Shown piece after piece: positions 3,001 through 64,000 of a stretch of 64,000 nucleotides of DNA. The first letter of the stretch is position 1. Each line of letters begins with the position of its first letter. The position numbers and the translations under genes are program-made. The notes beneath the pieces were generated by a model, which saw nothing but the letters and a program-made list of their open reading frames with translations, was not told the DNA's origin and made no database searches. The stretch lies in NCBI RefSeq assembly GCF_039654945.1, contig NW_027361819.1:1922001-1986000 (forward strand). The letters are read 5' to 3'. Source of the stretch: Dendrobates tinctorius (lineage: Eukaryota).

Positions 3001-3052
3001 TGTTCTCGAGCATTTGGCAGTAATGGCTGTCGGATTCTTCCTATTCTCTGTA

Positions 3053-13400: not shown

Positions 13401-13732
13401 ATAATACGGCCATACTATTGTAATGTGCTGCCATATGTAGCCCGCATAATACCACAATACAATGGCTAAGATAATATGAAATAAGATAATACTGCAATTG
13501 AAATCTAAAAAACTCACTGTATGTTACATAAGTTTTCCTGCCAGCACATCCGTAGTTGCAACAGATTCTTTGCTGCATATACTGCCAATGTGCACAGAGC
13601 CTAAGCCTCTGCTTTTCTCCTGGAGTTCTTGTCACCAGGACCCGATCTCACAGATCACTTATGAGATTACCGAGCTCTAAAACTGAACATGAGATACACA
13701 GGAATTATAATGTAACCAATTATAAAGGTCCG

Positions 13733-32500: not shown

Positions 32501-32523
32501 TCTTGTGCATAGGAGCAGTATTA
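23595..32523. repeat. 35/36-bp minisatellite (gggggcagtattatagtagttatattcttgtacata)n, ~9 kb
   Basis: Tandem periodicity, interrupted at 27716-27793 by a copy of its left flank. Confidence 0.98.
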
Positions 32524-43100: not shown

Positions 43101-43286
43101 AACCTAGTGAGGACGATAGGACAAGGTAAGAGAGGCCATAAGAAAGAGCAGAGAAGAAAAGAAGAGCGCTACACGGCCAGAGAAGCTGAAGGACAGAAGA
43201 AAGGACGCATTCAGGAGGGAAATGTTGAGTGACCTGAAGGAGGACCTAAAACAGAAGACTCACCAGGGGTGAACACAGAAAGATAA

Positions 43287-43377
43287 ATGTTCCACAACGC
43301 TTTTGATGACTGGATAATTGGGCTGCTTGGAATATTGGGTATGGCCTTATTTATTGGTTGCACCAGCTGCTGGCAAT
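43287..43377 (+). CDS. Putative first coding exon of a second type III transmembrane adaptor (TM + CxxC), apparently orphaned
   Basis: MFHNAFDDWIIGLLGILGMALFIGCTSCWQ followed by a consensus phase-1 donor (T|gtaagt), the same layout as LAT exon 1. No downstream exons recognised. Confidence 0.5.
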
Positions 43378-44049
43378 GTAAGTACATCTCACCAGTTTGG
43401 TCTCCAGGCCTACTCATTATCATGGTTTCAGGGCTTCTCAGCTCCAGGACTTTTGGTGTTATGCTCAAGACTTATGTTAAGGTTCCACATGCCTCCGATA
43501 GATGTCAGTTGAAGGCTTTTTTAGGCCGCCAGTGATTTCTTTTGACTCCCCCCATAAACACTAACTCTTGGCTTGATCAAGAGTTCACAGGCATTCAATA
43601 TAGAAATCAGAGTAAAGCCACTAATAGACACCCCTGAAACGTTGATTCTCCTCCTTATCTAATGAGAAAACCAAACCAATTCTCCCACCATTATCTCTAC
43701 CAACATCGTATGTTGGACTAGAATCAGAAGACCCCGATATGAGCTAGATGTGATGGGTTTGGGTGAAGAACGGGTTGAGGTTGTGTTCAGGGTTTTTGTT
43801 ACGGTTGGGAGCCACTTTAGATAACTTGATGAAAATTGTTAAACAACAGCCAACCAGGTAAATCCAAGGAGATGGTTTAATGATCTGATTAGATTAAGCC
43901 AGCTTAAAAATTATCACAACCAATGAACAATGAATAAGTGTTTCCTTCATTGGGTGATTACCAGATTGTTAAGACTGGCTGATAGTTGGGAACAAGCCCT
44001 GCTATAAATGCTAATTTGCCAATCATAGGTTCCTCCAAATGAGCCATAA

Positions 44050-44412
44050 GGACTTGTGAATTGGTTTCAGGCTGTGAGTTAAGATATAGTGCAGATCATG
44101 TATTGAGGTTGGGTTCAGGGTTTCTAGTAATGTAATTTTCAAAACTTGGGTCGTGATCGGATTTAGTTCCTTTGTGGGATTATAAAACATATATTGGGGT
44201 TAGGTTCAAGTTTTGCATGGGAATCAATCAAGAGCATATGTTGGGTAAAGGGTTCATGACTTGTGTTAAATTTGGCTTCAAGACTCATGTTGGGGTTGGG
44301 TTGAGGACTTGTGTTGGGGTCAAATTCAGGTCTTGCCTTAGGATTGAGTCCAGGTCATGTGTTGGATTTGGATTCAGGACTTGCGTTAGGATCAGGATCA
44401 GAATGTGTTGTG
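44050..44412. repeat. Degenerate ~24-bp tandem repeat (gggttcaggacttgtgttggggtt-like)
   Basis: Recurring ttcaggacttgtgtt-like motif about every 24 bp. Confidence 0.55.
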
Positions 44413-44712
44413 TTGACTGAAGATACTGTATGTCTTGGGGTAAGTGAAAAGAGGAGGATGATTGACCTCATGGAGATCAACATCCGACACTGCGGAGACA
44501 CCATCACGTGTTTCTCAACGCAGTGATTCTAGAGCACTGCTCCCATCCCTTGTGGGAAATATGTAAAACACGCAAATATATAAGCCGCGGAGACACCATC
44601 ACATGTTTCTCAACGCAGGCAGTGACTAGCCAGGTCTTTCACCGGGAAGGAACAACCACGGGAAGGGCAGTCTCCAATGAAGGAAACCACCTATGCCAAA
44701 ACATGGTATCCA

Positions 44713-44756
44713 TCCACAGACAGCTGTTTCGGGGTATTGCCCCTCATCAGTGTGGA
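44713..44756 (-). ncRNA. Minimal type I hammerhead ribozyme, copy 1
   Basis: Minus strand reads UCCACA-CUGAUGA-GGGG-CAAUA-CCCC-GAAA-CAGCUG-UC/UGUGGA: stem I UCCACA/UGUGGA, canonical core, 4-bp stem II, short stem III with palindromic AGCU loop, GUC cleavage triplet (cut between 44719 and 44718). Confidence 0.92.
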
Positions 44757-45066
44757 GTAGGAAACTGGCTAGTGGGAGCAATGCCTAGTAACAGACCATG
44801 AAAAGAGGAGGATGATTGACCTCATGGAGATCAACATCCGACACTGCAGAGACACCATCACGTGTTTCTCAACGCAGTGATTCTAGAGCACTGCTCCCAT
44901 CCCTTGTGGGAAATATGTAAAACATGCAAATATATAAGCCGCGGAGACACCATCACATGTTTCTCAACGCAGGCAGTGACTAGCCAGGTCTTTCACCGGG
45001 AAGGAACAACCACGGGAAGGGCAGTCTCCAATGAAGGAAACCACCTATGCCAAAACATGGTATCCA

Positions 45067-45110
45067 TCCACAGACAGCTGTTTCGGGGTATTGCCCCTCA
45101 TCAGTGTGGA
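45067..45110 (-). ncRNA. Minimal type I hammerhead ribozyme, copy 2
   Basis: Identical to copy 1, 354 bp downstream. Confidence 0.92.
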
Positions 45111-45420
45111 GAAGGAAACTGGCTAGTGGGAGCAATGCCTAGTAACAGACCATGAAAAGAGGAGGATGATTGACCTCATGGAGATCAACATCCGACACTG
45201 CGGAGACACCATCACGTGTTTCTCAACGCAGTGATTCTAGAGCACTGCTCCCATCCCTTGTGGGAAATATGTAAAACATGCAAATATATAAGCCGCGGAG
45301 ACACCATCACATGTTTCTCAACGCAGGCAGTGACTAGCCAGGTCTTTCACCGGGAAGGAACAACCACGGGAAGGGCAGTCTCCAATGAAGGAAACCACCT
45401 ATGCCAAAACATGGTATCCA

Positions 45421-45464
45421 TCCACAGACAGCTGTTTCGAGGTATTGCCCCTCATCAGTGTGGA
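45421..45464 (-). ncRNA. Minimal type I hammerhead ribozyme, copy 3
   Basis: As copy 1, but the 3' strand of stem II is CCUC (one G-C becomes a G-U wobble). Core intact. Confidence 0.88.
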
Positions 45465-45765
45465 GTAGGAAACTGGCTAGTGGGAGCAATGCCTAGTAAC
45501 AGACCATGAAAAGAGGAGGATGAATGACCTCATGGAGATCAACATCCGACACTGCGGAGACACCATCACGTGTTTCTCAACACAGTGATTCTAGAGCACT
45601 GCTCCCATCCCTTATGGGAAATATGTAAAACATGCAAATATATAAGCCGCGGAGACACCATCACATGGGAGCAGTGCTCTAGAATCACTGCGTTGAGAAA
45701 CACGTGATGGTGTCTCCGCAGTGTCGGATGTTGATCTCCATGAGGTCAATCATCCTCCTCTTTTC

Positions 45766-45909
45766 TTAGACTATGAGGCCGGGCGTCTGTCCTTCTATGA
45801 GATGTGTGACCCCATCAGACACTTACACACCTTCACCTCCTCCTTCACTGAACCCCTACATGTTATCTTGTATGTGTATAAAGGAGCCTCTGTTACAATA
45901 AGAAGCTGA
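45766..45909 (+). pseudogene. 3' remnant of a different TRIM paralogue (C-terminal SPRY only)
   Basis: LDYEAGRLSFYEMCDPIRHLHTFTSSFTEPLHVILYVYKGASVTIRS* aligns to the end of the 5336-6883 TRIM but is clearly diverged. It starts abruptly at the inverted end of the 354-bp array. Confidence 0.9.
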
Positions 45910-46519
45910 GGCCGAGATTAAATGTTCATGAGTGAATTGACCCAGTTGTTTGCTTATTTTAATGGGTTACTTCCATCTCCTTAACTTCTGGTATATGGAT
46001 CGGATATACCATAACTTTTGTCATTGCTTGGACCCCACTAATCCAGAGAATGAAGGCACCACAGTCTCCCCTTTTAAGGCTTCCTAGTATGAGTATTGGT
46101 GTTTTTTTTTTTATGCTGCACCTTTTCTTTCACAAAAAGCACAGAATATTACATTAACACTTCCTGACACATGCCGTAAGTGTACATCACGATCAGGAAG
46201 GGGTTCCTCTAAATTAATGATCGGTTACATCATGGCGATCATGCAGGCACAGCTTATCTTGGCTTACGTGATAGCGGAGCTCCAGCTGTCGCACGCTATC
46301 TCCCATCCAATTGGCAGCCCCGCAACGTGATCACTTGCTGCCGATGGTAGTCATCCCAACCAGAGGTCTAATAATGACGTCTGAGTCTGCAAGTTATGGG
46401 GGCCTGTTAGACCTTGGTCCTAGAATGGTCTAACAGGTGATCTGGCAATGTCACACTGACTGGTGTAATGCATTGCAGCACATGTGCATTAGAGCAATGA
46501 TCAGAAGTTTTAAGCGCAA

Positions 46520-47180
46520 GGCCGGGGCCCGGTCCCCGAGGTTGTATGGACGCTGAATGTCCTGCAGCAGACACCGGAGGAGTAGTGAGCTGTAAATGCA
46601 CTACTCCCATCTAAGACTTGGGGGCACAACAGCAACTTGGATAGTGAGCCGGGACTCAGGAGTAGAGTCCCCGAAGCAGGCTACAGCTGTCTGCCGTACA
46701 AGTAGAGTTCTTGGGAACATCTGTCAGGAGGCACTCCAGTTTAACTCGGTACTAGGAGATCTTCACACTTAAAGGCGCTATAGAGGAGACGTTCAGAAAG
46801 GTACATGTTGGCGGAGTGTTGGAAGGGAGCATCCTATCTTGCCTGGAGGTTGACTGAGCCCAGGACCCAGAGGACACAGCACGGAGGCAGGCATCTGTGT
46901 GAACTGCAGACTGTGAGTAAAGCTTTGGAACTACATGCCCTGGTGTCCTCCACTTATTCCTGCATCACTACACCCCGCACTACTACATCTGGGCACCAGC
47001 CTCTACACCGCCTGTGCCTCTCCTCCATTGCTACATCTACACTGCCCTGGGACTACAGCTCCACCTGTGGGGAGCTTCACCATCTTGGCTGCAACCCACC
47101 ACCAGTCCCAGAGGATCTGCATGCAGCATCGGCCTAACACCTCACTTGCCGAACACCACAGGTGGCGTCACGAACTATTC
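46520..47180 (+). mobile_element. Possible decayed solo-LTR-like repeat
   Basis: GC-richer block with gactgtgagtaaag... and ...aggtggcgtcacgaac, reminiscent of anuran Gypsy LTR ends. Termini and TSD not verified. Confidence 0.3.
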
Positions 47181-50100
47181 ATAAACTTCATTTCATTGTT
47201 CATTCATCCCCTTTTTGCCAAAAACTCAATATAAATCTGGTATTGCTGTAATCGCACCCACCCGAAGAATAAAGTCGCCTAATTACTTATACCACATGAG
47301 GGACTGTGTGAAAAATAAAGAAACAAGAAAATTCTTCACCTGCTGATTTGTTCATTCTGCCTCCCAAAGATCACAGTAAAGCTTGGTGCACAATTATCCT
47401 GCACTCTGCGCTTAGCGCTTACACCAGGGTTTCTGTGTAAATCTCTGATTCAAATGGAATCCCTAGTGGAAGATTCCTTATAATGAGGCAGAGGGAGGCA
47501 CTGTGGATGTCATCTGACCTGTGATCCGGCAGTGTCAGTGTTTTTAGGTGTGTATAAAAGCATGGTCCGCCACAGTTTTGTGCACTTCTGAAAAAGACAA
47601 TGCTGAACAGAGGCCAGACGGAGTACAGAGTAATTCTGCTGCCTCATTATAGTGAATGAATCATTCTGGGGTTTCATCTGAATGTCGTCAACTCGGCAAT
47701 TCAATAATACTTTCAGTTCTGAAATTGAAGAAAAAATATAACCTTTTTTTTTTTTTTTTTAAATTTTTTAATATGTAGTTCAAGGGGGGCAATTTTGAGT
47801 TTTAGGTTTTGGTTCCCATAGGGTAGTACTCCTGCAGATGTTTGTGAAATTCTGTCCAAGAACAAACCACTGTGAATTGACAGTCCGTGGTTCTTCTGAC
47901 CTGAAAGGGAAAGCAGCTCTGCAGGCACTAAATACACCTGATTGAGAAGATCACACTGGCCTTGAATAAGAAGGAAGCAACGTGGAGAAGCTTTGATGGT
48001 CAAGATGGCCTCCGGGAGAGTAGAGTCTGAGAGGACTGCCTTTAAAGCTTAAACATGTTGAGTCGCTTCAATTGGAAGCCCACATTATTACCAAGAAAAT
48101 CGCCAGTCATTTTAAAGAAACTTAGAGAAGCAAGAGTTGTCTGAGAACCCCAGACAAGCTAGACACATCTCAGTAAAATTTTCAAGAGTTGGAAGCCAGG
48201 AGTGAGGAACTGTCTCGGGACATTTCTCGAATTAAGGACTTGGTCAACAAAAAAAGATGTCCTATTGATTTTACAAGCAAAAGATGATGTATGTAATGGA
48301 GATAAGTGTCTCCTCTATGCTATGGGTGATCTGAATGTAGGGGTGATCTCTGAGATTCTACAGAAAGGCATGGCAGAGTTTGTGACCCACGCTGAGACTT
48401 GTATCTCTCTACGTAGAGTCTTGCCAATCATTATGGATGTAAATTTGGCTCATAAAAGGATGGAGATCTCAGAAGACTTGAAAACCCATATCGGCTTCTG
48501 ATGTGAAGCATGATCGTCCGCCCTCAAGATTTAGTACTTGCACTCAAGTCTTGAGCACCTATTGCTTCACTGAGCAATGCAGCACTACTGGGAAGTCGAA
48601 ACCAGCAGCCAATGAATATGGGACGTTGGTTTGGCTTATTCTAGTATCGAAAGAGAAGGGAAATGTTATGGGATTGGAGACCATAACTGTGTCCTGGTTT
48701 TTGTAGAGATACACGATAAAGTCCCCTCTGGCCCATAACTCAAAAGCCAAGTTCCTAATTATTGAGCAGTGTTCCCCAATAATAGGCAAGTAGCTGAATT
48801 AGGAGGGTGGACTCTTGGAGTTTTATGAGCTACGTGACCAGGAGCGGCACTTGTTCTGACATCTACATACTTTCCAAGCCAATTTCCAGGAATGTTTGCA
48901 TGCAGCATTCTATGTAGACAATGGGGCTCGGATTAAGGTCCTCCTATAGAAATATTACTGTCTGTAACTTGGGGTGCACTAAATGTGTTTTACATAGTAG
49001 TGTTGATGGTTCATTGGTGTCACTGTTTGATGTTCACAATAAAAATTTCAAAGAATTCATTTCTTCTCCTTTTTCTTTTTTTTGCTTTATCTGAGTTCCC
49101 TTAGAAGCTTCAAAATGTGTTGGAGACCTCATGTCTGTTGGTTTCTCCTTTTGTCTTGGGCTCAAGATTCTTGTAGGAAGTTTCATAAGCCGGTGACCAC
49201 ATGTACACCATTTAGTAAGCAGAAACATCTCTTGTCCCAGCGATCACGTGATCGCTCGTAAGGAGCGGGGGCTTACGGGTCTTGGTAGACTCCGATCAGT
49301 ACAAAGAAGGCTAAATTTGACCTGTAACTGGGGCTAACTGGCAGCAAGCAGAGATCATGGACATCGGTAAATGTGCACAGGAACTTTTAGTTCTAGAACT
49401 TTACCAGAAGGTGTCACTGTTCGCTCACCAGGCGCTATAATGTACCCTAGCGTAATATTGTATAATGTGATGAGCTGTAAGATGTATTTTATGCTATACA
49501 CCCCTCTCAACATGGCAAGCAGGGATTACAATGGCACCCTAAATGTGATGCATCATGGTGGAAAAATAAAGAAAAATGGCAGACATTACACAGAATGGGA
49601 GGAGGAGGACATCAGAGACTCCGGGCATCCCATCCTCGTCACTCCCGGGACCTACCGCAGGCCGTGTCCTGAAGCTGAACCCCATGATAACGCTGTCTGT
49701 GGCGGTGTCCGAGAATGGGAAGATATGAGTGTCTAAGACATACATGTATTTACGGGGCTGATCTAGGGCCTGGTGGGTGGTCTTGTCTAAGGTATATTTT
49801 GAGGCTCACTTTAGAGTCTGCATTTCATTAATGGTCTGGTTATAGTTCAGGTGAGATGTATTTATGGGACATGGTTTTGGACCATTTATAAATTTGAGAC
49901 TCCCTTTATTAGGGGTTAGTCTGATCTGAGGCCTCTATGGTGGGGGATCTGGTCTTAGGCCTTTATCAGGGGGGAGGGGATCCGGCCTGAGGCTAGTATT
50001 GGGAGATCTGAGGCCTCTATTGGGGGGCAGAGTTGGTCTGGGGTCTGTACTACGGGGCTCTGATCTGAAGCCTGTTTTTCATTAGTGGGACCGTTTTGCT

Positions 50101-50460
50101 TTAGGGGGTTTGTGTTAATGGGGTCTGAGAATGGTTGGACTGGTCTCATCAGAAGAGACATTAGAGATGACGGCAGGAAGGGGTTGGTTCATTGGCCTTC
50201 CATCCGGCAGTCACCAATTACTGACTGGGAGATTGCTCAAGGGTCTCACTAATCGATTTGCTCATCTGGTCTAGTGTTTGTGTTTAATGTGGTCAGGCCT
50301 GGGGTCTTTACATATTTTATGGGGTCTAGTTACCAGTCTCTATCTTGTGGGATCGGATTTGGGGTCTGTTTTGGTTTGGTTGATGGGGTCTGCTGTGGCG
50401 TCCGATTTTGGTCTCGAGCATTTGGCAGTAATGGCTGTCGGATTCTTCCTATTCTCTATA

Positions 50461-52027
50461 CAGTGGGGAAGAAAAGTCTTTAGTCAGCCACCAATTGTGC
50501 ACGTTCTCCACTTATAAAGATGAGAGCGGCCTGTAATTGACATCATAGGTAGACCACAACTATGAGAGTCAAAATGAGAAAACAAATCCAGAAAATCACC
50601 TTGTCTGATTTGGGAAGATTTATATTGCAAATTATGGTGGAAAATAAGTATTTGGTCATTAACAAAAGTTCATCTCAATACTTTGTGATATATCCTTTGT
50701 TGGCAATGACAGAGGTCAGAGGTTTTCCATAAGTCTTCACAAGGATGGCACACACTGTTGGCGGTATGTTGGCCCATTCCTCCATGCAGATCTCCTCTTG
50801 AGCGGTGATGTTTTGGGCCTGTCGCTGGGCAACACGGACTTTCAAATCCCTGCAAAGGTTTTCTATGGGGTTGAGATCTGGAGACTGGCTAGGCCACTCC
50901 AGGACCTTCATATGCTTCTTACTAAGCCACTCCTTTGTTGCCCTGGCGGTGTGCTTGGGATCATTATCATGCTGAAAGTCCCATCTACGTTTCATCTTCA
51001 ATGCCCTTGCTGATAGGAGGTTTGCACTCAAACTCTCACGATACATGGTCCATTCATTATGTCATGTACACGGATCAGTTGTCCTGGTCCCTTTGCAAAG
51101 AAACAGCCCCAAAGCATGATGTTGCCACCCCCATGCTTCACAGTAGGTATGGTGTTCTTTGGATACAACTCAGCATTCTGTTTCCTCCAAACACGATGAG
51201 TTTTGTTTCTACCAAACAGTTCTACTTTGGTTTCATCAGACCATATGACATTCTCCCAATACTCATCTGGATAATCTAAATGCTCTCTACCAAACTTCAG
51301 ACGGGCCCGGACATGTACTGGCTTAAGCAGGGGGACACGTCTGGCACTGCAGGATCTGAGTCCCTGGTGGCGTAGTGTGTTACTGATGGTAGTCTTTGTT
51401 ACAGTGGTCCCAGCTCTATACAGGTCATTCACTAGGTCCCCCCATGTGGTTCTGGGATTTTTGCTCACCGTTCTTGTGATCATTTTGACCACACGGGGTG
51501 AGATCTTGTGTGGAGCCCCAGTTTGAGGGAGATTATCAGTGGTCTTGTATGTCTTCCATTTTCTTATAATTGCTCCCACAGTTGATTTCATCATACCAAG
51601 CTGCTTGCCTATTGCAGATTCAGTCTTCCCAGCCTGGTGCAGGGCTACAATTTTGTTTCTGGTGTCCTTCTACAGCTCTTTGGTCTTCACCATAGTGGAG
51701 TGTGACTGTTTGAGGTTGTGGACAGGTGTCTTTTATACTGATAAGTTCATTACTACAGGTAATGAGTGGAGGACAGAGGAGCCTCTTAAAGAAGAATTTA
51801 CAGGTCTGTGAGAGCCAGAAATCTTGCATGTTATTAGGTGCCCAAATACTTATTTTCCACCATAATTTGCAAAATAAATCTTGCCAAATCAGACAAGGTG
51901 ATTTTTCTAGATTTGTTTTCTCATTGTGACTCTCATAGTTGTGGTCTACCTATGAGGCCTCTCTCACCTTTTTAAGTGAGAGAACTTGCACAATTGGTGG
52001 CTGACTAAATACTTTTTTTCCCCACTA
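50461..52027 (-). mobile_element. Tc1 (DD34E) transposon, duplicate of 3053-4619
   Basis: Same inverted repeats, same early TAG and same frameshift. Confidence 0.95.
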
Positions 52028-52743
52028 TATGTGTCTGCCGGGGTGGTGGGAGGTTTCTGATTTTCTGATTTCTTTATTAGATCTGTGTCTCTGCTCATGA
52101 TTCTGTGACTTTTTCCCACAGCTCTGCTCTGAGGACAGGGATAATTTTAGCATTACTGTACATCCCATCATCTATTTTGGCCATCACCTTTTACAAGGGC
52201 CAGGAATAGCCAGTAATCCTATCCTGCTCGTTCAGTGTCTTCCCTGGCCGCTGACCAGTCAGAATTCTTGCCCCTTGTAGCGAGAAAGCTTTTCCAAACA
52301 AAAATAAAAAATACACTCCTGATAAATATCGGTCGTCCTCATCTGTCAATTAATGAAAAACTTCTTGGATGTTTGGGTGCTAACCAAAATACCAATATGG
52401 CTGGCAGTATTGATCTTACAAGTGGTGCTTGTCTCTCATTTTTCCCAGGCTTAAGATTAGTAAGTCCACCAGATTAATGCAGGTTTTCCACTCTGAAGCC
52501 ATATTGGTGGTCACCCAGTTTTTCCAAGTTCTGTTTACTGGGGTTTAGGCTCAGTAACCTTGGACTGGGAGTTTGTTGTGGGGACACTCAGGCGGCAGAT
52601 CAGGTTCACACTGAGGACTTGAAGACTCAGCCGAGTGTAATTATCAGAAGGAACAGCTGAGACGTGCAGGACGCTACAACAGCTGAAGTCTGAAGTGAAT
52701 ATTCGGCACTGTTGTCGCTGCGCTCCACTCCTTGCTGGACTCG

Positions 52744-54291
52744 ATGGCGACTGCAGATCTGAAGGACGAGCTGAACTGTTCCATATGCCTGAATATCTAC
52801 ATGGAGCCTGTAACTCTGAGATGTGGCCACAGCTTCTGCCAGGGATGTATCCGATCGGTACTGGACAGGCAAGATGGAGTTGGCATCTACACCTGCCCAG
52901 AATGCCGTGCAGAATACCAAAAGCGCCCACCATTGCGACGGAACTTGAAGCTTTGTAACATCGTGGAGCATTTCCGGTCAACGCAACCAGAGGCGAAGCC
53001 TCCCGGGATCTTCTGCACCTACTGCGTCCATGCCTCCGTCCCAGCATTCAAGACTTGCCTGATGTGCGAAGCTTCTCTGTGCAGTGTCCATCTGAGCGTT
53101 CACAGCAAATCCACCGACCACGTCTTGACAGAGCCCACCAGCTCCATGGACAACAGAAAATGTGCCACTCACCAGGAGATGCTAAAGTACTACTGCTGTA
53201 AAGATGCCGCCTGCATCTGCGTGTCATGTTGCGTGTTTGGAGAACATCGAGGACATCAGGTGGAACTTCTCAAAGAGGCATCTGAGAAGAAGAAAGAAAA
53301 ACTAAGAAAAGTTCTGGAAAAGCTGTCCTCAAAATGTGAAGAGACGGAGAAGAGCATGCAAAGTTTACAAGATCACAAGAGGGGAGTCAAGGAGAAAGCC
53401 GCAAACATGACGACATGGGTGACTGCTCTGTTTAAGGACATCAAGGCCCAGGTCCAAGCTCTGGAAGAACGGGTCTTGAGTGACATCTCCAGACAGAGGG
53501 ATAAAGTCTCGCTCTCAGTCACTGATCTGATCCAGCAACTGGAGATGAAGAAGGAGGAGTTGTCCAGGAAGATGATGTACATCGAGGAGCTGTGCCAAGT
53601 GCCCGATCCACTCGATGTCCTACAGGGACGGGACGTCAGCAGAGCTGAGCCGCCAGATGAAGGACTTGGTAAGAGGCTGCAGGCTGTAGGTGATCTTGAT
53701 GAAGTTCTGACCTCGTTGACCCTACAGTCATCTTTATCCAGTATTGTGACCAACTTAAAGCAAAACGTTAACGTCCAAAACTTAATGCTGGACATTAAGA
53801 CGGCGGCGGTTGATGTGTCTGTGTCCGGAGACCTGAAGAGCGCTACGTGGTCCAAGACCCCGATCTGGACAAAAGCTTCACAAAGATTTAAAAACTATTG
53901 TCAGGTTCTGAGTTTTCAGAGTTTTAGCTCCGGAAAGATTTACTGGGAAGTGGAGACCAGTGAACTAGGGAATTGGAGGGTGGGGGTGGCATATCCCAGC
54001 CTGGAGCGGAAGGGAGATCTGTCCGGGATAGGACAGAACAACAAATCCTGGTGCCTTCGCCTGTGTCAGAAGGATTATCTTGTCGCTCATGCTGCAAAAG
54101 AGATTCCACTACAGCTGGAGACCTCGCTGCAGAGACTAGGTATATTCCTGGACTACGAGGCTGGGCGGCTGTCCTTCTATCGGCTGTGTGAGCCCATTCA
54201 ACATCTCCACACCTTCACTGCCACCTTCACAGAGCCTCTTCATGCAGTGTTTCTGGTATGGCGGGACGGTTGGGTGAGAATCCGGAGCTAG
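52744..54291 (+). CDS. Intronless TRIM-PRY/SPRY E3 ligase, duplicate copy, 515 aa
   Basis: Intact ORF. Differs from copy A at DISK->DISR and VDVA->VDVS, plus at least one silent change. Confidence 0.95.
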   Translation: MATADLKDELNCSICLNIYMEPVTLRCGHSFCQGCIRSVLDRQDGVGIYTCPECRAEYQKRPPLRRNLKLCNIVEHFRSTQPEAKPPGIFCTYCVHASVPAFKTCLMCEASLCSVHLSVHSKSTDHVLTEPTSSMDNRKCATHQEMLKYYCCKDAACICVSCCVFGEHRGHQVELLKEASEKKKEKLRKVLEKLSSKCEETEKSMQSLQDHKRGVKEKAANMTTWVTALFKDIKAQVQALEERVLSDISRQRDKVSLSVTDLIQQLEMKKEELSRKMMYIEELCQVPDPLDVLQGRDVSRAEPPDEGLGKRLQAVGDLDEVLTSLTLQSSLSSIVTNLKQNVNVQNLMLDIKTAAVDVSVSGDLKSATWSKTPIWTKASQRFKNYCQVLSFQSFSSGKIYWEVETSELGNWRVGVAYPSLERKGDLSGIGQNNKSWCLRLCQKDYLVAHAAKEIPLQLETSLQRLGIFLDYEAGRLSFYRLCEPIQHLHTFTATFTEPLHAVFLVWRDGWVRIRS

Positions 54292-56227
54292 GATTACTAA
54301 CCTAGATGACCTGGTCCTTTAGGATGGAAGCCCTTCGAGCCTTATCCTAACTGCCAGCCTCTACGGTGCCTCTTCTGATTTGGTAGGCCTTGCGTGATGT
54401 CATGTATGCGTTGTGCCGCAACGATGACGTCACATTGGGCTTGCCAATCAGAAGACGAGTTGAGGATTGGTGCAGGTGGTAAGGTGGAGGTTTGTTGACT
54501 CCTAACTGGTGGCCACTTAGTAGTGGCTGTTGGGCCAGGGTCCAACGAATTGTTTAGCTCATGTTTATTTTCGAAAAAGATAAAAATGGGAAACGCTAAT
54601 TTTAAAGGAACTCTTCAGACAAAACTCTGGGTGGGGCACCAGACGGCATTATAATGCTCCACCACCTCAGATCAGTGTTTCGATTTTACGTTTAAGGTTT
54701 TTTTTAACAGAAAATTAGTCTAGGAAGGCTCCTCATGAGCTTTGCTAAAGTTTTCCTTTTTAAAGCGGCTTGTCAAATCCTGTTAACATAAAGGGATATT
54801 CTGATCTACACAAATGGTCACATATCTGCTGGATCAAGGTGGGTCTGAACATTGGGACTTATATTGGTCACCAGAATGGGGGATTCTCCATTCTCCCCTG
54901 ACCTCAAGACGATGGCGGGAGTTGTTGACTTGAGTGCAGGTGACTATAGATTCTGTTCATCAGTCGTGGGGCCTGAATGGAACTTCATTCAGACAAGGTC
55001 TTCCGGCCAAGGGAGATCGGCTATTGATGGGTGTCCCAATGGGTAGATCCACACCAATCTATCCAGTGGTTATTTGATCATCTTGTGTAGATCTAAAGCA
55101 TGTAATGAAAACTTCTGACACTTTTTTTTACATATTCTTACTTTCTCTGCTTGCTTTCAGTGAATGAAAACCTTTATTGTCCTCGTGTGGAACATGAATG
55201 AATGTTTCATATGTGTGACCCAAATGTATCTCGCTTGTCTGTTAAATTTGACCACTTTATGGTTTATTTTTGGATGTTACTCTCTGTATGCAGAATCCAA
55301 TCAATAAACCTTTCCTTCTGATGAATTGTGACTTTTACATTTTTGGTCTTCACTGCTGTCTCCTTCCCTGGACATATCTGGCCACCTTCTCTAGGTTTGT
55401 GGCTCCTCTACTTCTCTATGACCCTACAGCCACCTCCCCACCCTATTATACCTCTGATCCGAGGAGCCTTACACATTTTTATCCGGATGAGCCCCATTTC
55501 TCCAGGAGCCCTATAGCCGCTGCCTGTCCTGCCTCTTTAGCAAGTCAAGAGTTCCAATAAGGTGTGGGGCTTCTGAACATTTTCACTTATGGAGGCGACC
55601 ATGGACATTAATGAGGTCGGAATTAAAATATCCTGCAAATTAGGATTCTCCTGCTGGTCTGTAGAGTGATGGCGACTATATAGGTTGTCGCCCAGATTTT
55701 CCCCAAAAATTGCTGATCGTGCCTGTGAGGAGCAGGTTTTTTTTTTCTTTCTTTAGACATGTTTATTATGTGCACTCGATGGCGGCATAACCACTGGTAA
55801 GTCACAAACTACTGCAACTACGGAAAGACCTCCACCCCAAGAAACTCCCTGCAGATCATCACATCGTTGGCTCCGAGAACCTGCAGGACATTTCTCTGTC
55901 CCCTGTATAGTATAATTATGTAACACACCGCCACCATCCGCCCATAGCACATATGGATGGTGACATTACCGCAGCGCTGCAGCAGCTGACTCACATCCTG
56001 GGCTCAGCTCTTGCACAAGGCTCCCAGAGTGATGTTTCCGTTCTTAGCACAAACCTGAGAAAAAACTCAGCAGCTTCTAAATGTGCAGAAGTCAGAGCTG
56101 CATCCATTGGGGTGTCGGGGGGCCGCTGGTTCTCAAAGACCCGAAGAGATAAAGTCCTGAGGTTACAGAAACCAATGACCAGTAGGGATCAGCTGCCAAC
56201 GGTTCTTCCCCTGATGATGTCACAGTT

Positions 56228-59200
56228 CACCATATAGTGTCAATGCGACCATATACAGCCCGTGTAATACCACCATATAGTGTCAATGCAGCCATATACA
56301 GCCCGTGTAATACCACCATATAGTGTCAATGCGACCATATACAGCCCGTGTAATACCACCATATAGTGTCAATGCGACCATATACAGCCCGTGTAATACC
56401 ACCATATAGTGTCAATGCGACCATATACAGCCCCTGTAATACCACCATATAGTGTCAATGCGACCGTATACAGCCCCTGTAATACCACCATATAGTGTCA
56501 ATGCGACCATATACAGCCCCTGTAATACCACCATATAGTGTCAATGCGACCATATACAGCCCGTGTAATACCACCATATAGTGTCAATGCGACCATATAC
56601 AGCCCGTGTAATACCACCATATAGTGTCAATGCGACCATATACAGCCCGTGTAATACCACCATATAGTGTCAATGCGACCATATACAGCCCCTGTAATAC
56701 CACCATATAGTGTCAATGCGACCATATACAGCCCGTGTAATACCACCATATAGTGTCAATGCGACCATATACAGCCCGTGTAATACCACCATATAGTGTC
56801 AATGCGGCCATATACAGCCCGTGTAATACCACCATATAGTGTCAATGCGGCCATATACAGCCCGTGTAATACCACCATATAGTGTCAATGCGACAATATA
56901 CAGCCCGTGTAATACCACCATATAGTGTCAATGCGGCCATATACAGCCCCTGTAATACCACCATATAGTGTCAATGCGACCATATACAGCCCGTGTAATA
57001 CCACCATATAGTGTCAATGCGACCATATACAGCCCATGTAATACCACCATATAGTGTCAATGCGACCATATACAGCCCGTGTAATACCACCATATAGTGT
57101 CAATGCGACCATATACAGCCCGTGTAATACCACCATATAGTGTCAATGCGACCATATACAGCCCATGTAATACCACCATATAGTGTCAATGCGACCATAT
57201 ACAGCCCCTGTAATACCACCATATAGTGTCAATGCGACCATATACAGCCCGTGTAATACCACCATATAGTGTCAATGCGACCATATACAGCCCGTGTAAT
57301 ACCACCATATAGTGTCAATGCGACCATATACAGCCCCTGTAATACCACCATATAGTGTCAATGCGACCATATACAGCCCGTGTAATACCACCATATAGTG
57401 TCAATGCGACCATATACAGCCCGTGTAATACCACCATATAGTGTCAATGCGACCATATACAGCCCGTGTATTACCACCATATAGTGTCAATGCGGCCATA
57501 TACAGCCCGTGTAATACCACCATATAGTGTCAATGCGGCCATATACAGCCCCTGTAATACCACCATATAGTGTCAATGCGGCCATATACAGCCCGTGTAA
57601 TACCACCATATAGTGTCAATGCGACCATATACAGCCCCTGTAATACCACCATATAGTGTCAATGCGACCATATACAGCCCCTGTAATACCACCATATAGT
57701 GTCAATGCGACCATATACAGCCCGTGTAATACCACCATATACACTGTGTTCCAAATTATTATGCAAATGATATTTTTCTCTGATTTTCCTAAATAGTCGG
57801 TACAAATGACAGTCAGTCTAATAAAAGTCATCACCCGTTAGATTATACATCAAATTTTATTGAAGAAACCTCCCAATGATAACAGTATAATCTCCAAAAT
57901 GAATAAAAACTCAAATTTCACTGTTCCGAATTATTAGGCACAGTAGAATTTCTAAACATTTGATCTGTTTTAAAGAACTGAAAATGTTCATTTGTGGAAT
58001 TTGCAGCATTAGGAGGTCACATTCACCGAACAAAAAAGCTATTTAACTCCAAAACATCCTAACAGGGCAAGTTACGTGGTAACAGAGGAACCCTTCTGTG
58101 ATGTCACCTTCACAATTCTTGCATCCATTGAACTTGGGAGTTTTTGGAGAGTTTCTGCTTGTATTTCTTTACATGAAGTCGGAATAGCCTCCCAGAGCTG
58201 CTGTTTGATGTGAACTGCCTCCCACCCTCATAGATCTTTCGCTTGATGATACTCCAAAGGTTCTCCATAGGGTTGAGGTCAGGGGAGGATGGTGGCCACA
58301 CCATGAGTTTATCTCCTTTTATGCCCATTGCAGCCAATGACTCAGAGGTCTTCTTTGCCGCATGAAGAGGATTTTGCTCCTGAAGGCATGTTTCTGCTTT
58401 TTATACCATGGAAGACAGCGGTCAGTCAGAAACTCTATATACTTTGCAGAGGTCATTTTCACACTTTCAGGAACCTTAAAGAGCCCTACCAGCTGTTTCC
58501 CCATGATTCCGGCCCAAAACATGACTCCTCCTCCTTGCTGAAGTCGCAGCCTTGTTGGGACATAGTGGCCATCCACCAACCATCCACTACTCCATCCATC
58601 TGGACCATCCAGGGTTGCTGGACACTCATCAGTAAACAAGACTGTATGAAAATTAGTCTTCATGTATGTCTGGACCCACTGCTACAATTTCTGCTTGTGA
58701 ACACTTTTTAGGGGTGGCCGAATAGTAGATTTATGCACCACAGCAAGCCTTTGAAGGATCCTACACCTTGAGGTTCGACGGACTCCAGAGGCACCAGCAG
58801 CTTTAAATATCTGTTTGCTGGTTTGTAATGGCTTTTTAGCAGCTGCTCTCTTAATCCGATGAACTTGCCTGGCAGAAACCTTCCTCATTCTGCCTTTATC
58901 AGCACAAACATGTCTGTGCTCAGAATCAACCACAATTCTCGTAACAGTGCGATGGTCACGTTTAAGTTTTTGGGAAATATCTAATGTTTTCATCTCTTGA
59001 CCAAGGCATTGCACTATTTGATGCTTTTCAGCAGCAGAGAGATCCTTTTTCTTTCCTAAATTCCTTGAAACCTGTGCCCTGCTTAATAATGTGGAACATC
59101 ATTCTTAAGTAGCTTTCCTTTAATTGAGCTCACCTGGTAAACTAATTATCACAGGAATTTGAGATTGATTTCTGTGATCCAAAGAGCCCTGATACACAAT

Positions 59201-60547
59201 ACCATCTATGAGTTTATTTGAAAAACAAAAAATAACATCTTTATGACACTTAAATCCAATTTGCATAATAATTTGGAACGCAGTGTAGTATCAATGCGAC
59301 CATATACAGCCCGTGTAATACCACCATATAGTGTCAATGCGACCATATACAGCCCCTGTAATACCACCATATAGTGTCAATGCGACCATATACAGCCCCT
59401 GTAATACCACCATATAGTGTCAATGCGGCTATATACAGCCCGTGTAATACCACCATATAGTGTCAATGCGGCCATATACAGCCCGTGTAATACCACCATA
59501 TAGTGACAATGCGGCCATATACAGCCCGTGTAATACCACCATATAGTGTCAATGCGACCATATACAGCCCCTGTAATACCACCATATAGTGTCAATGCGA
59601 CCATATACAGCCCCTGTAATACCACCATATAGTGTCAATGCGACCATATACAGCCCCTGTAATACCACCATATAGTGTCAATGCGGCTATATACAGCCCG
59701 TGTAATACCACCATATAAAGCCCATGTAATACCACCATATAGTGTCATTGCGACCATATACAGCCCATGTAATACCACCATATAATATCAATGCAGCCAT
59801 ATACAGCCCGTGTAATACCACCATATAGTGTCAATGTGACCCTATACAGCCCGTGTATTACCACCATATAGTGTCAATGCGACCATATACAGCCCGTGTA
59901 ATACCACCATATAGTGTCAATGCGACCATATACAGCCCGTGTAATACCACCATATAGTGTCAATGCGACCATATACAGCCCCTGTAATACCACCATATAG
60001 TGTCAATGCGGCTATATACAGCCCGTGTAATACCACCATATAAAGCCCATGTAATACCACCATATAGTGTCATTGCGACCATATACAGCCCATGTAATAC
60101 CACCATATAATATCAATGCAGCCATATACAGCCCGTGTAATACCACCATATAGTGTCAATGTGACCCTATACAGCCCGTGTATTACCACCATATAGTGTC
60201 AATGCGACCATATACAGCCCGTGTAATACCACCATATAGTGTCAATGCGACCATATACAGCCCGTGTAATACCACCATATAGTGTCAATGTGACCCTATA
60301 CAGCCCGTGTATTACCACCATATAGTGTCAATGTGACCCTATACAGCCCGTGTAATACCACCATATAGTGTCAATGCGACCATATACAGCCCGTGTAATA
60401 CCACCATATAGTGTCAATGTGACCCTATATAGCCCGTGTATTACCACCATATAGTGCCTATGCGGCCATACATAGCCCGTTTAATACCACCATATGGTGT
60501 CAATGCGGCCATACATAGCCCGTGTAATACCACCATATAGTGTCAAT
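56228..60547. repeat. 43-bp minisatellite, duplicate
   Basis: Same unit; shorter than copy A to the right of the TRT insertion. Confidence 0.96.
57742..59285 (-). mobile_element. TRT-type Tc1-like transposon, duplicate
   Basis: Same TIRs, same TA site and same internal deletion as 10334-11880. Confidence 0.9.
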
Positions 60548-60879
60548 ATAATACGGCCATACTATTGTAATGTGCTGCCATATGTAGCCCGCATAATACC
60601 ACAATACAATGGCTAAGATAATATGAAATAAGATAATACTGCAATTGAAATCTAAAAAACTCACTGTATGTTACATAAGTTTTCCTGCCAGCACATCCGT
60701 AGTTGCAACAGATTCTTTGCTGCATATACTGCCCATGTGCACAGAGCCTAAGCCTCTGCTTTTCTCCTGGAGTTCTTGTCACCAGGACCCGATCTCACAG
60801 ATCACTTATGAGATTACCGAGCTCTAAAACTGAACATGAGATACACAGGAATTATAATGTAACCAATTATAAAGGTCCG

Positions 60880-63800
60880 CTGCTATAACCTGGGTGTATT
60901 ATGTATATAATTATATATGTACAGCTGCTATAACCTGGGTGTATTATGTATATAATTATATATGTACAGCTGCTATAACCTGGGTATATTATGTACATAA
61001 TGATATATGTACAGCTGCTATAACCTGGGTATATTATGTACAGTATATAATATATGTACAGCTGGTATAACCTGGGCATATCCTGTATTTAATGATATAT
61101 GTACAGCTGGTATAACCTGGGCATCTCCTGTATATAATTATATATGTACAGCTGGTATAACCTGGGCATCTCCTGTATATAATTATATATGTACAGCTGG
61201 TATAACCTGGGCATCTCCTGTATATAATTATACATGTACAGCTAGTATAACCTGGGCATCTCATGCATAAAATTATACATGTACAGCTGGTATAACCTGG
61301 GCATCTCATGTATATAATTATACATGTACAGCTGGTATAACCTGGGTATCTCCTGTATATAATTATATATGTACAGCCGGTATAACCTGGGCATCTCCTG
61401 TATATAATTATATATGTACAGCTGGTATAACCTGGGCATATCCTGTATATCCAAAATTCTAAAATAGCATGGTCGCTACCTCCTAGGGTCCCAGCCACTT
61501 TTACCTCCTCAACCATTTCCTCCCTGTTTATAAGGATTAGATCCAAGGTAGCAGTTCCCCTTGTTTTCTCCCGTACCTTTTGGAAGATAAAGTTGTCAGC
61601 AAGAGAGGATAAGAATTTCCTTGACCTGTTAGTTTTGCCTGAGAGAGATTCCCAACAAATGTCTGGATAGTTGAAATCTCCCATGACAACTATGTCATAT
61701 TTTTTGGAGAACTTGGCCATCTGATGCATAAAGAGTTCATCCATATCTTCAGCTTGCACAGGCGGCCTGTAGTAAATGCCTACAATGGTGTCCTTTCCAT
61801 TGTTCTGTCCTTGTATTCTTACCCAAACAGTTTCCACAGAACTCCCAGTCTCTGAAGCTTCAATCTCTGTGCAGATATACGCGTTTCGAACATACAATGC
61901 GACACCCCCTCCTCGTTTATCAAGTCTGTTTCTTGCAAATAAGTTGTATCCTTCTAGTCTTGTATTCCAATCATGTGTATTGTCCCACCAAGTTTCAGTG
62001 ATTCCAATTACATCATAGTTCTACATCATTATATATGTACAGCTGGTATAACCTGGGCATCTCCTGTATATAATTATATATGTACAGCTGGTATAACCTG
62101 GGCATCTCCTGCATATAATTATATATGTACAGCTGGTATAACCTGGGCATCTCCTGTATATAATTACACATGTACAGCTGGTATATCCTGGGCATCTCCT
62201 GTATATAATTACATATGTACAGCTGGTATAACCTGGGCATCTCCTGTATATAATTATATATGTACAGCTGGTATAACCTGGGCATCTCCTGCATATAATT
62301 ATATATGTATAGCCGGTATAACCTGGGCATCTCCTACATATAATTATATATGTACAGCTGGTATAACCTGGGCATCTCCTGTATATAATTATATATGTAC
62401 AGCTGGTATAACCTGGGCATCTCCTGCATATAATTATATATGTATAGCCGGTATAACCTGGGCATCTCCTACATATAATTATATATGTACAGCTGGTATA
62501 ACCTGGGCATCTCCTGTATATAATTATACATGTACAGCTGGTATAACCTGGGCATCTCATGTATATAATTATACATGTACAGCTGGTATAACCTGGGCAT
62601 CTCCTGCATATAATTATATATGTATAGCCGATATAACCTGGGCATCTCCTGCATATAATTAAATATGTACAGCCGGTATAACCTGGGCATCTCCTGCATA
62701 TAATTATATATGTATAGCTGGTATAACCTGGGCATCTCCTGCATATAATTATATATGTACAGCTGGTATAACCTGGGCATCTCCTGTATATAATTACACA
62801 TGTACAGCTGGTATAGCCTGGGCATCTCCTGTATATAATTATATATGTACAGCTGGTATAACCTGGGCATCTCCTGTATATAATTATATATGTACAGCTG
62901 GTATAACCTGGGCATCTCCTGCATATAATTATATATGTATAGCCGGTATAACCTGGGCATCTCCTGCATATAATTATATATGTATAGCCGGTATAACCTG
63001 GGCATCTCCTGCATATAATTATATATGTACAGCTGGTATAACCTGGGCATCTCCTGTATATAATTATATATGTACAGCTGGTATAACCCGGGTATCGCCT
63101 GTACATAATTATACATGTACAGCTGGTATAACCTGGGTATATTATGTACATAATGATATATGTACAGCTGTTATAACCTGGGTATATTATGTACAGTATA
63201 TAATAATATATGTACAGCTGGTATAACTAGGGCATCTCCTGTATTTAATGATCTATGTACAGCTGGTATAACCTAGGCATCTCCTATATTTAATGATATA
63301 TGTACAGTTGGTATAACCTGGGCATCTCCTGTATATAATTATATATGTACAGCTGGTATAACCTGGGCATCTCATGTATATAATTATACATGTACAGCTG
63401 GTATAACCTGGGCATCTCATGTATAAAATTATACATGTACAGCTGGTATAACCTGGGCATCTCATGTATAAAATTATACATGTACAGCTGGTATAACCTG
63501 GGCATCTCATGTATAAAATTATACATGTACAGCTGGTATAACCTGGGCATCTCATGTATATAATGATACATGTACAGCTGGTATAACCTGGCCATCTCAT
63601 GTATATAATGATACATGTACAGCTGGTATAACCAGGGCATCTCAAGTATACAACGATACATGTACAGCTGGTATAACCTGGGCATCTCCTGTATATAATG
63701 GTATATGTACAGCCGGTATAACCTGGGCATCTCCTGTATATAATTATATATGTACAGCTGGTATAACCTGGGCATCTCCTGTATATAATTATATATGTAC

Positions 63801-64000
63801 AGCCGGTATAACCCGGGCATCTCCTGTATATAATGATATATGTACAGCCGGTATAACCCGGGCATCTCCTGTATATAATTATATATGTACAGCCGGTATA
63901 ACCCGGGCATCTCCTGTATATAATTATATATGTACAGCTGGTATAACCTGGGCATCTCCTGTATATAATCATATATGTACAGCCGGTATAACCTGGGCAT
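60880..64000. repeat. 45-bp minisatellite, duplicate (runs off window)
   Basis: Same unit and same variant order as 13733-17258, with unit-number differences. Confidence 0.96.
61451..62022 (-). mobile_element. CR1 endonuclease fragment, duplicate
   Basis: Same junctions as 14349-14920; frame still open. Confidence 0.9.

What the first reader, a model, noticed from the sequence alone, without database searches (positions are those of the whole stretch)
44446..45909. Ribozyme array with a 101-bp inverted end sits between two truncated genes: likely junction of the 47.4-kb duplication
Seen: 45665-45765 is a perfect reverse complement of 44446-44546, joined through a 3-nt (atg) microhomology, with no target-site duplication. 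The right flank starts mid-SPRY of a TRIM whose 5' part is absent. The left flank holds an orphan TM exon with no recognised downstream exons. Established: an inverted terminal pLTR copy is typical of Penelope-like insertions. Inference: in an X-U-U-Y tandem duplication the U/U junction joins the tail of one gene region to the head of another, as seen here, so the retroelement may have patched or triggered the duplication.
Basis: partly seen in the sequence, partly recalled or inferred. Interest (0 to 1): 0.75.

Follow-up and report, generated by a model that had tools for sequence, protein, structure and literature searches.

The report
Retrozyme array bridging a rearrangement joint
A common frog "retrozyme" (a self-cutting jumping RNA repeat) was pasted in as two head-to-head arms between two stretches that were not neighbours, cutting off a TRIM immune gene; it may be the seam of a 47-kb duplication, but that is unproven.

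Summary
Window 44446-45664 is 3.45 tandem 354-bp units. 45665-45765 is a perfect inverted copy of the first 101 nt, joined through a 3-nt ATG overlap, and there is no target-site duplication. Each full unit carries an intact minimal type-I hammerhead on the minus strand. This is the 352-354-nt frog retrozyme family, which this scan has already reported at other loci of the same genome, two-armed insertions included, so the element itself is ordinary.

What is unusual is its setting. The right flank starts at residue ~467 of a TRIM SPRY domain, and no TRIM 5' part lies to the left. Public-run contigs show a second, ~2% diverged version of the left flank. It leaves the window exactly at the array edge (44449) and runs on for 563-593 nt of unique sequence. 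So the array is not a simple insertion; it bridges two DNA ends that were not adjacent.

Whether this joint is the seam of the duplication cannot be settled here. The window shows only that 1-16584 recurs at 47417-64000, and that homology runs off the window edge. The unit-to-unit differences make the array look younger than the flank divergence.

My odds:
- duplication seam: about 0.45
- insertion with deletion inside one copy: about 0.35
- assembly artefact: under 0.1

The parts
44446..45664 (-). Direct array of the retrozyme: three full 354-bp units (44446-44799, 44800-45153, 45154-45507) and a 157-nt partial unit (45508-45664). The sense strand, which carries the hammerhead, is the minus strand.
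   Evidence: units 98-99% identical; all 7 variable sites are singletons
44713..44756 (-). Hammerhead ribozyme motif 1. Helix I is UCCACA/UGUGGA, followed by CUGAUGA. Helix II is GGGG/CCCC, followed by GAAA. Helix III is 2 bp capped by the palindromic AGCU loop. The cleavage triplet is GUC, with the predicted cut between 44719 and 44718.
   Evidence: read; cut sites located; fold shows helices I and II; Rfam gives only 16 bits against a cut-off of 48.5
45067..45110 (-). Hammerhead motif 2, same sequence.
   Evidence: weak Rfam hit at 45075-45121
45421..45464 (-). Hammerhead motif 3. One helix II C-to-U change turns a G-C pair into G-U.
45665..45765 (+). Inverted arm: perfect reverse complement of unit positions 1-101. 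Its outer end is the same unit position as the left end of the array.
   Evidence: (I4, 100%)
45665..45667 (.). ATG microhomology where the long and short arms are joined.
   Evidence: read
44445..44449 (.). Left junction. TGAAA is shared by the array end and by the array-free version of the left flank.
   Evidence: table 8: variant contigs of all four runs align up to 44449 and then continue unaligned
45763..45765 (.). Right junction. TTC is shared by the arm end and by the TRIM reading frame (the Phe codon of ...GVFLDYE...).
   Evidence: table 7 (X5 loose end before 45763); (the TRIM paralogue at 6737 aligns from 45763)
45766..45909 (+). Orphan 3' end of a TRIM25-like gene: the last ~48 codons of SPRY plus the stop codon.
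43200..44445 (.). Left flank. It is low-copy, contains degenerate ~91-96-bp repeats, and has a second version ~2% diverged in the reads.
47417..64000 (+). Second copy of window 1-16584 (offset 47416). It includes an intact TRIM at 52744-54291.

Best explanation
SHOWN. The 1.32-kb block is a non-coding hammerhead retrozyme of the abundant 352-354-nt frog family. It was laid down as two complementary-DNA arms that face each other. Both arms begin at the same template position (GAAAAGAGG... read outward-in). The left arm ran for 3.45 units and the right arm for 101 nt, and they are joined by a 3-nt overlap. Each outer junction shows 3-5 nt of overlap with the flank (TGAAA on the left, TTC, which is GAA on the other strand, on the right). 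There is no target-site duplication. The two flanks are unrelated sequences: a low-copy stretch about 1 kb past a possible transmembrane exon, and the last 48 codons of a TRIM SPRY domain.

INFERRED MECHANISM. Two free 3' DNA ends, each ending in GAA(A), annealed to the UUUC of the retrozyme RNA. A Penelope-like reverse transcriptase extended both, and the two cDNAs were then ligated through microhomology. In a normal insertion the two ends are the two sides of one staggered cut. Here they came from two different places.

INFERRED, MOST LIKELY BUT UNPROVEN. The two places were the downstream and upstream ends of a ~46-kb segment on sister chromatids. On this reading the bridge created the tandem duplication (period 47416 = segment + array) and left a decapitated TRIM tail at the start of the second copy.
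For: - Architecture.
- Hammerhead core present in all three full units.
- No ORF with a Pfam match.
- An inverted 5'-truncated copy at the 5' end is the published PLE insertion structure (PMC8557442). Amphibian retrozymes of ~330-353 nt with short-helix-III hammerheads are published (PMC7229834; bioRxiv 10.64898/2026.07.22.740005).
- Very high copy number: word depth over the array is 10^5, against ~5-10 for the flanks.
- Not a simple insertion. Contigs of a second left-flank version (24 substitutions, 2 deletions and 1 insertion) from three runs of one sample align only to 44449, then continue 563-593 nt as low-depth (5-9) unique sequence. A run of a second sample has the same version ending at 44449 on a short contig that runs only 13 letters further. 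No piece lands on 45766 onward and no joint 44449>45766 is listed.
- Positive control: at 47810-48900 the variant contig carries exactly the 7 substitutions and the 19-nt insertion of window copy 1. So such variant contigs can be the other duplication copy.
- The junction of a 47.4-kb tandem duplication must lie between 16585 and 47417, and this is the only discontinuity recognised there.
- Divergence between copies is high on both sides of the array and falls to 0.42% further in: 2.1% on the left, 3.6% at 46102-46267, 4.4% at 47417-47870. This is expected if the ends of the duplicated unit lie here.
- Precedent: L1 cDNA bridging sister chromatids gives tandem duplications with the insertion at the joint (PMC7058536).
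Against: - So it is unknown whether an intact TRIM precedes the other copy of the right flank, and whether LAT is really duplicated.
- The window's own junction words were not seen in any contig (at 44354-44409 only the variant letters are laid), so the joints are not confirmed independently of the assembly.
- Age: there are 7 singleton differences in 1320 nt of array (4 non-CpG). If the array were as old as the left-flank divergence, 10-14 would be expected (P about 0.02-0.03).
- The right-flank contig 45886-46532 has about the depth of one copy (3.7-5.3, against 7-10 for the two-copy control). The only variant seen there (46102-46267) stops matching at 46102, beside a T11 run. The start of the duplicated unit may therefore lie right of the TRIM tail.
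Confidence: 0.45

Rival explanations
1. Insertion with deletion inside one copy. The duplication is older and its seam lies elsewhere (for example near 46102 or inside the high-copy repeat 46447-47783). Later, a retrozyme cDNA twin-primed from two breaks on the same chromatid replaced the stretch between them. That stretch held at least 563 nt plus the first ~466 codons of the TRIM.
For: - The array looks 2-4 times younger than the 2-4% divergence of its flanks.
- The second left-flank version continuing into unique sequence fits equally well as the undeleted paralogue.
- The right-flank variant loses similarity at 46102.
- For L1, insertion-mediated deletions are commoner than duplications (PMC7058536).
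Against: - It needs two independent rare events within about 1-2 kb of each other.
- If the heterology arose with the array, the flanks should be only as diverged as the array is old, and they are more diverged.
- No other discontinuity is known in the 30.8-kb interval that must hold the seam.
Confidence: 0.35
2. Assembly artefact. Two separate retrozyme insertions, or two haplotypes, were joined through the shared 1.3-kb repeat. This would create a false junction and perhaps a false duplication.
For: - No contig in four runs carries the window's own letters next to the left junction.
- The family has tens of thousands of copies.
- PLE tandem/inverted structures are known to trouble assemblies (PMC8557442).
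Against: - There are no gaps in the window.
- Window-specific versions of both flanks are present in the reads (records with 0 other letters).
- Both outer ends fall on the same template position with matching microhomology, as in one coordinated event.
- A 1.3-kb repeat is short for long-read assemblies.
Confidence: 0.07
3. Unequal crossing-over between two pre-existing retrozyme arrays (or other repeats) 47.4 kb apart made the duplication, so every unit boundary carries the array.
For: Retrozyme copies are dense enough in this genome for such pairs to exist.
Against: - The second left-flank version does not enter an array. It continues for 563-593 nt as a unique low-depth contig.
- For the neighbouring high-copy repeat, dense differences extend 26-88 nt beyond its right end. 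That does not fit a crossover inside it.
Confidence: 0.04
4. Ordinary polymorphic insertion into contiguous DNA, with the variant contig being the empty allele.
For: Retrozyme insertions are very common here (notes).
Against: - There is no TSD.
- The right flank begins mid-exon, and no 5' part lies on the left.
- The array-free version does not continue into 45766 onward.
Confidence: 0.03

Closest known systems
Animal non-LTR retrozymes (amphibian ~330-353-nt families; Cervera and de la Pena 2020, PMC7229834; 2026 preprint 10.64898/2026.07.22.740005)
   Same: - Tandem ~354-bp non-coding units
- One type-I hammerhead per unit, with a very short helix III and a palindromic loop
- Huge copy number
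- Co-existence with PLEs
   Different: Nothing about the element itself differs. Circular RNA and cleavage were not tested here.
Penelope-like element insertion architecture (Evgen'ev and Arkhipova 2005; Craig et al. 2021, PMC8557442)
   Same: - Partial tandem copies
- An inverted, 5'-truncated copy abutting the 5' end
- Hammerhead in the repeated part
   Different: - No RT/GIY-YIG ORF (non-autonomous)
- No 30-40-bp tail
- No target-site duplication, and the two flanks are not contiguous DNA
L1-mediated rearrangements: retrotransposition-bridged tandem duplications and deletions (Rodriguez-Martin et al. 2020, PMC7058536); twin priming (from my own knowledge: Ostertag and Kazazian 2001)
   Same: - A short retroelement cDNA sits exactly at the joint of two distant breakpoints
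- A second 3' end is used as a second primer
- Microhomology at the joints
   Different: - Different reverse transcriptase lineage (PLE-type, inferred), a non-autonomous ribozyme RNA as template, and germline rather than tumour
- Both arms start at the same template position, whereas in L1 twin priming the second primer starts internally
- The duplication link is unproven here
Capture of retroelement cDNA at double-strand breaks (from my own knowledge: Teng et al. 1996; Moore and Haber 1996; Morrish et al. 2002)
   Same: Filler cDNA joining two broken ends without a TSD, with short microhomologies.
   Different: Both ends here primed at one defined template site. That points to reverse-transcriptase-guided priming rather than passive capture.

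Membership tests
Animal non-LTR retrozyme | Head-to-tail units of ~170-400 bp | tested here: met
   354-bp period, 3.45 copies, 98-99% identical
Animal non-LTR retrozyme | Type-I hammerhead ribozyme in each unit | tested here: inconclusive
   The full conserved core (CUGAUGA, GAAA, GUC, helices I and II) is read directly in 3 units. Rfam scores only 16 bits against a cut-off of 48.5, and only for the type III model. Minimal PLE-type motifs are poorly covered by those models.
Animal non-LTR retrozyme | No protein-coding capacity | tested here: met
   The longest ORFs are 97 and 50 aa, with no Pfam match
Animal non-LTR retrozyme | Expressed as linear and circular RNA; self-cleavage | not tested
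   No RNA run held the stretch; only contigs were laid
Penelope-like insertion architecture | Inverted 5'-truncated copy adjacent to the 5' end of a (partial) tandem | tested here: met
   The arm 45665-45765 is at the 5' end of the minus-strand (sense) array; definition from PMC8557442
Penelope-like insertion architecture | Target-site duplication flanking the whole unit | tested here: not met
   No shared word longer than 6 nt, and none at the junctions
Penelope-like insertion architecture | RT plus GIY-YIG endonuclease ORF | tested here: not met
   No such ORF in the block. The block would be a non-autonomous passenger.
Retroelement-bridged tandem duplication | The end of the duplicated unit exists a second time without the insertion and continues into different sequence | tested here: met
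   Variant left-flank contigs stop matching at 44449 and run on for 563-593 nt
Retroelement-bridged tandem duplication | The start of the duplicated unit exists a second time, preceded by its natural upstream sequence (here the TRIM 5' part) | tested here: inconclusive
   Contigs break at 45886 because TRIM paralogues share words. The only variant seen covers 46102-46267, and the depth of 45886-46532 looks single-copy. Protein searches found no same-species full-length TRIM with this tail.
Retroelement-bridged tandem duplication | The whole interval between the two breakpoints is present twice | not testable with these tools
   Only 1-16584 = 47417-64000 is visible.
Retroelement-bridged tandem duplication | Insertion as old as the duplication | tested here: inconclusive
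   The array shows 0.53% per lineage. That fits the interior divergence of 0.42% pairwise but not the 2-4% of the flanks.

The most novel reading that the evidence does not exclude
A Penelope-type reverse transcriptase, copying a hammerhead retrozyme RNA from two chromosome ends 46 kb apart on sister chromatids, created a germline 47.4-kb tandem duplication. The duplication doubled the T-cell adaptor gene LAT and an intact TRIM ligase gene, and left a decapitated TRIM at the seam. This would be the first case of a retrozyme/PLE-bridged segmental duplication in a vertebrate germline.
Probability: 0.4. Interest if true: 0.6.

Novelty: new member of a known kind. Interest (0 to 1): 0.4.

Why it matters
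The element itself is a routine copy of a repeat already known in amphibians and already found many times in this genome.

The setting is the useful part. It is a clean, base-resolved joint where retrozyme cDNA made from two primers links two DNA ends that were not neighbours. That shows the Penelope/retrozyme machinery, like human L1, can leave structural rearrangements and not only insertions.

If the joint proves to be the seam of the 47-kb duplication, it would explain how an extra LAT and TRIM copy arose in a poison frog. It would also add a new retroelement class to the known makers of segmental duplications.

Tried and rejected
- Rfam at gathering thresholds found nothing in the window. 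At permissive E-values it gave only spurious microRNA hits on the hairpin formed by the inverted arm, plus a 16-bit hammerhead hit.
- A word search with the PRY/SPRY part of the intact TRIM returned 120 frog TRIMs, but none with this tail. The best tail identity was 78% (80% over a shorter 40-residue match), all in other species.
- A word search with the tail ORF itself found no candidate. Because of the length limits, neither blank shows absence.
- The search of earlier findings by sequence gave nothing, and no neighbouring window has notes.
- Copy number from contig depths was attempted, but the figures scatter too much to count copies: 2.4-5 for the window version, 4-8 for the variant, 7-10 for the control.
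- Snap-back self-priming as the origin of the inverted arm was considered and rejected. Such an arm would run on into the reverse complement of the previous unit, whereas this one stops exactly at unit position 1.
- A crossover inside the neighbouring high-copy repeat (46447-47783) was considered and is disfavoured. The dense differences extend 26-88 nt past its end.

Full report
WHAT IS THERE

Window 44446-45664 holds three complete 354-bp units and a 157-nt fourth unit. Period, register and 98-99% identity come, and the column-by-column comparison. Directly after it, 45665-45765 is the perfect reverse complement of 44446-44546 (pair I4). The direct array would have continued ...CACATG|TTTC and the inverted arm ...AGGG|ATGGGAG, so the two share exactly ATG at 45665-45667.

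The 60-nt flanks share no word longer than 6 nt, and none at the junctions, so there is no target-site duplication.

THE ELEMENT

On the minus strand each full unit reads UCCACA-CUGAUGA-GGGG(CAAUA)CCCC-GAAA-C(AGCU)G-UC|UGUGGA. This has every conserved hammerhead position: a 6-bp helix I, a 4-bp helix II, and a 2-bp helix III capped by a palindromic loop. The motifs lie at 44713-44756, 45067-45110 and 45421-45464, and the predicted cuts are at 44719|44718 and the equivalent sites. The third copy has one G-C to G-U change in helix II.

Rfam does not reach its thresholds. At permissive settings it gives 16 bits for a hammerhead model and some spurious microRNA matches to the hairpin made by the inverted arm. 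So the ribozyme call rests on direct reading of the motif, not on a database score.

The ORFs in the block have no Pfam match. Word depth over the array in public runs is about 10^5, against 5-10 in the flanks. Unit size, hammerhead type and copy number match the amphibian non-LTR retrozymes, including the 353-nt axolotl family whose ribozymes work as dimers (PMC7229834; also bioRxiv 10.64898/2026.07.22.740005).

Earlier notes of this scan report the same 352-354-nt family at other loci of this genome, including two-armed insertions (s1-376832, s1-366788). The element itself is therefore ordinary.

HOW IT WAS LAID DOWN

The sense strand is the minus strand, so the inverted 101-nt piece sits at the 5' end of the element. 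This is the "inverted 5'-truncated copy adjacent to the 5' end" that is typical of Penelope-like insertions (PMC8557442).

Both outer ends of the block fall on the same unit position: GAAAAGAGG... reads inward from each side.
- At the left junction, the array-free version of the flank seen in reads still matches through 44449. TGAAA is therefore common to flank and element.
- At the right junction, TRIM paralogues (a loose end in run X5; the in-window TRIM) match from 45763. TTC, the Phe codon of ...GVFLDYE..., is therefore common to arm and gene.

On their own strands both primers thus ended in GAA(A). The simplest reading, which is inference, is that two 3' DNA ends annealed to the same UUUC of the retrozyme RNA and were both extended by a reverse transcriptase. 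The two cDNAs were then joined through the ATG overlap. A snap-back of one cDNA would not stop exactly at unit position 1.

THE SETTING

The right flank encodes the last 48 codons and the stop of a SPRY domain. It matches Pfam SPRY positions 73-116 of 121 and residues 467-515 of the intact, intronless TRIM at 5336-6883, at 65% identity. Its closest tails are TRIM25-like proteins of other frogs, mostly 70-78% identical (80% for one shorter 40-residue match). No TRIM 5' part lies anywhere to its left in the window.

40000-47416 has no other copy in the window, apart from that 100-nt TRIM similarity. The proposed transmembrane exon at 43287-43383 has no Pfam hit and no paralogue here. I could not confirm that it is an exon.

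EVIDENCE FROM PUBLIC RUNS (contigs only)

Three runs come from one sample and one from another.

1. Both a window-identical and a ~2% diverged version of the left flank are present. The diverged version has 24 listed substitutions, deletions of 2 and 5 nt, and a 1-nt insertion.
2. In the three runs of the first sample, the diverged version aligns only up to 44449, and its contigs then continue for 563-593 nt at unique-sequence depth (5-9). In the run of the second sample the same version also ends at 44449, on a short contig that runs only 13 letters further.
3. No second piece of these contigs lands on 45766 onward, and no 44449>45766 joint is listed. Such a contig would also have broken at 45886, as the window-type contig does.
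4. The array is therefore not a simple insertion with an empty allele. The left flank's other version goes somewhere else, starting exactly at the array edge.
5. Positive control: at 47810-48900 the variant contig of run X3 carries exactly the 7 substitutions and the 19-nt insertion that distinguish window copy 1 (394-1484) from copy 2. Variant contigs of this kind can therefore be the other duplication copy.

Caveats:
- At 44354-44409 only the variant letters are laid, so the window's own left junction is not confirmed by these contigs.
- Contigs drop low-depth branches, and depths are too noisy to count copies.

IS IT THE SEAM OF THE DUPLICATION?

The window shows that 1-13142 equals 47417-60547, and the same satellites continue to the window end. 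So 16.6 kb is seen twice at an offset of 47416. The alignment starts at window base 1, so it is cut by the window. If it is a tandem duplication, its seam must lie between 16585 and 47417, and the array is the only discontinuity recognised there.

For the seam reading:
- The behaviour of the left flank is as predicted.
- There is a published precedent: L1 cDNA bridging sister chromatids, with the insertion at the joint of a tandem duplication (PMC7058536).
- Divergence forms a gradient: 2.1% in the left flank, 3.6% at 46102-46267, 4.4% at 47417-47870, and 0.42% (35/8307) further in. Unit ends lying here would produce this pattern if the interior were homogenised.

Against it:
- The array's units differ by only 7 singletons in 1320 nt (4 non-CpG). 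If the array were as old as the left-flank divergence, 10-14 would be expected (P about 0.02-0.03). This age does fit the interior divergence.
- The contig 45886-46532 has about single-copy depth.
- The one variant seen on the right (46102-46267) stops matching at 46102, next to a T11 run. The start of the duplicated unit might therefore lie to the right of the TRIM tail.

A later retrozyme insertion that deleted the stretch between two breaks in one copy explains the age better. It needs a second rare event right at the zone of high divergence.

I put the seam reading at about 0.45, the insertion-with-deletion reading at about 0.35, an assembly artefact at about 0.07, and the remaining alternatives together below 0.1.

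WHAT COULD NOT BE DONE

- Two word searches found no same-species full-length TRIM with this tail. Their length and ranking limits mean these blanks carry little weight.

VERDICT

This is a real, well-formed, two-armed retrozyme insertion of a known and abundant family. It sits at a genuine rearrangement joint that decapitated a TRIM gene. The link to the 47.4-kb duplication is plausible and testable by looking just outside the window, but it is not shown.

Noticed in passing
window 5336-6883 and 52744-54291: Intact intronless TRIM (RING, B-box, coiled coil, PRY/SPRY; 515 aa) present twice, differing by 2 residues (K250R, A359S). It is 84-93% identical over the PRY/SPRY part to single 'TRIM39-like/TRIM25-like' proteins of many frogs, so it is a conserved gene rather than part of the fast-evolving TRIM swarm.
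   Followed up: partly
protein P0013 (Phyllobates terribilis) and P0041 (Hyperolius riggenbachi): NCBI gene models of 725-726 aa fuse the orthologue of this TRIM to a LAT domain (PF15234, residues 552-721 in P0013). So TRIM followed by LAT on one strand is conserved synteny, and read-through or fusion transcripts may exist.
   Followed up: partly
window 1-450 versus 47417-47870, compared with the rest: Divergence between the two in-window copies is 4.4% in the first 450 nt and 0.42% beyond 47900. The dense differences run 26-88 nt past the end of the high-copy repeat. This suggests gene conversion of the interior or a two-step history.
   Followed up: partly
window 46447-47783: Non-coding high-copy repeat (word depth 10^5 in DNA runs), with no Pfam match in its ORFs. 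It lies between the TRIM tail and the start of the visible second copy.
   Followed up: no
window 45508-45664: Three of the seven singleton changes of the array (T>A, G>A, G>A) fall in the 157-nt innermost partial unit next to the arm joint, and six of the seven are changes to A. These may be errors made during synthesis near the template switch rather than later mutation.
   Followed up: no
window 45763-46317, run X5: In the run from a second sample, summed contig depth is about 210,000 over the TRIM tail, 18,000 just after it, and 400 for a variant of 46102-46317, while unique flanks have 3-7. The cause may be strong expression of a close TRIM paralogue (if the run is RNA) or a shared repeat. 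Unexplained.
   Followed up: no
window 906-1530 and 48313-48937: Decayed PRY/SPRY fragment, about 30-35% identical to residues 312-514 of the intact TRIM. It is an older TRIM pseudogene inside the duplicated block.
   Followed up: no
window 3620-4186 (-) and 51028-51594 (-): Remnant of a Tc1/mariner transposase (HTH_Tnp_Tc3_2, E 9e-23).
   Followed up: no
window 8820-13400, 13718-18442, 23595-32523, 37437-39552: Four large minisatellite arrays (43-, 45-, 35/71- and 38-bp units; the 35/71-bp one is 8.9 kb) fill much of the space between the TRIM and LAT.
   Followed up: no
window 44441-44446: The last bases of the left flank read GTAAGT after ...CTTGGG, a consensus splice-donor look-alike right at the insertion point. 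This may be chance.
   Followed up: no
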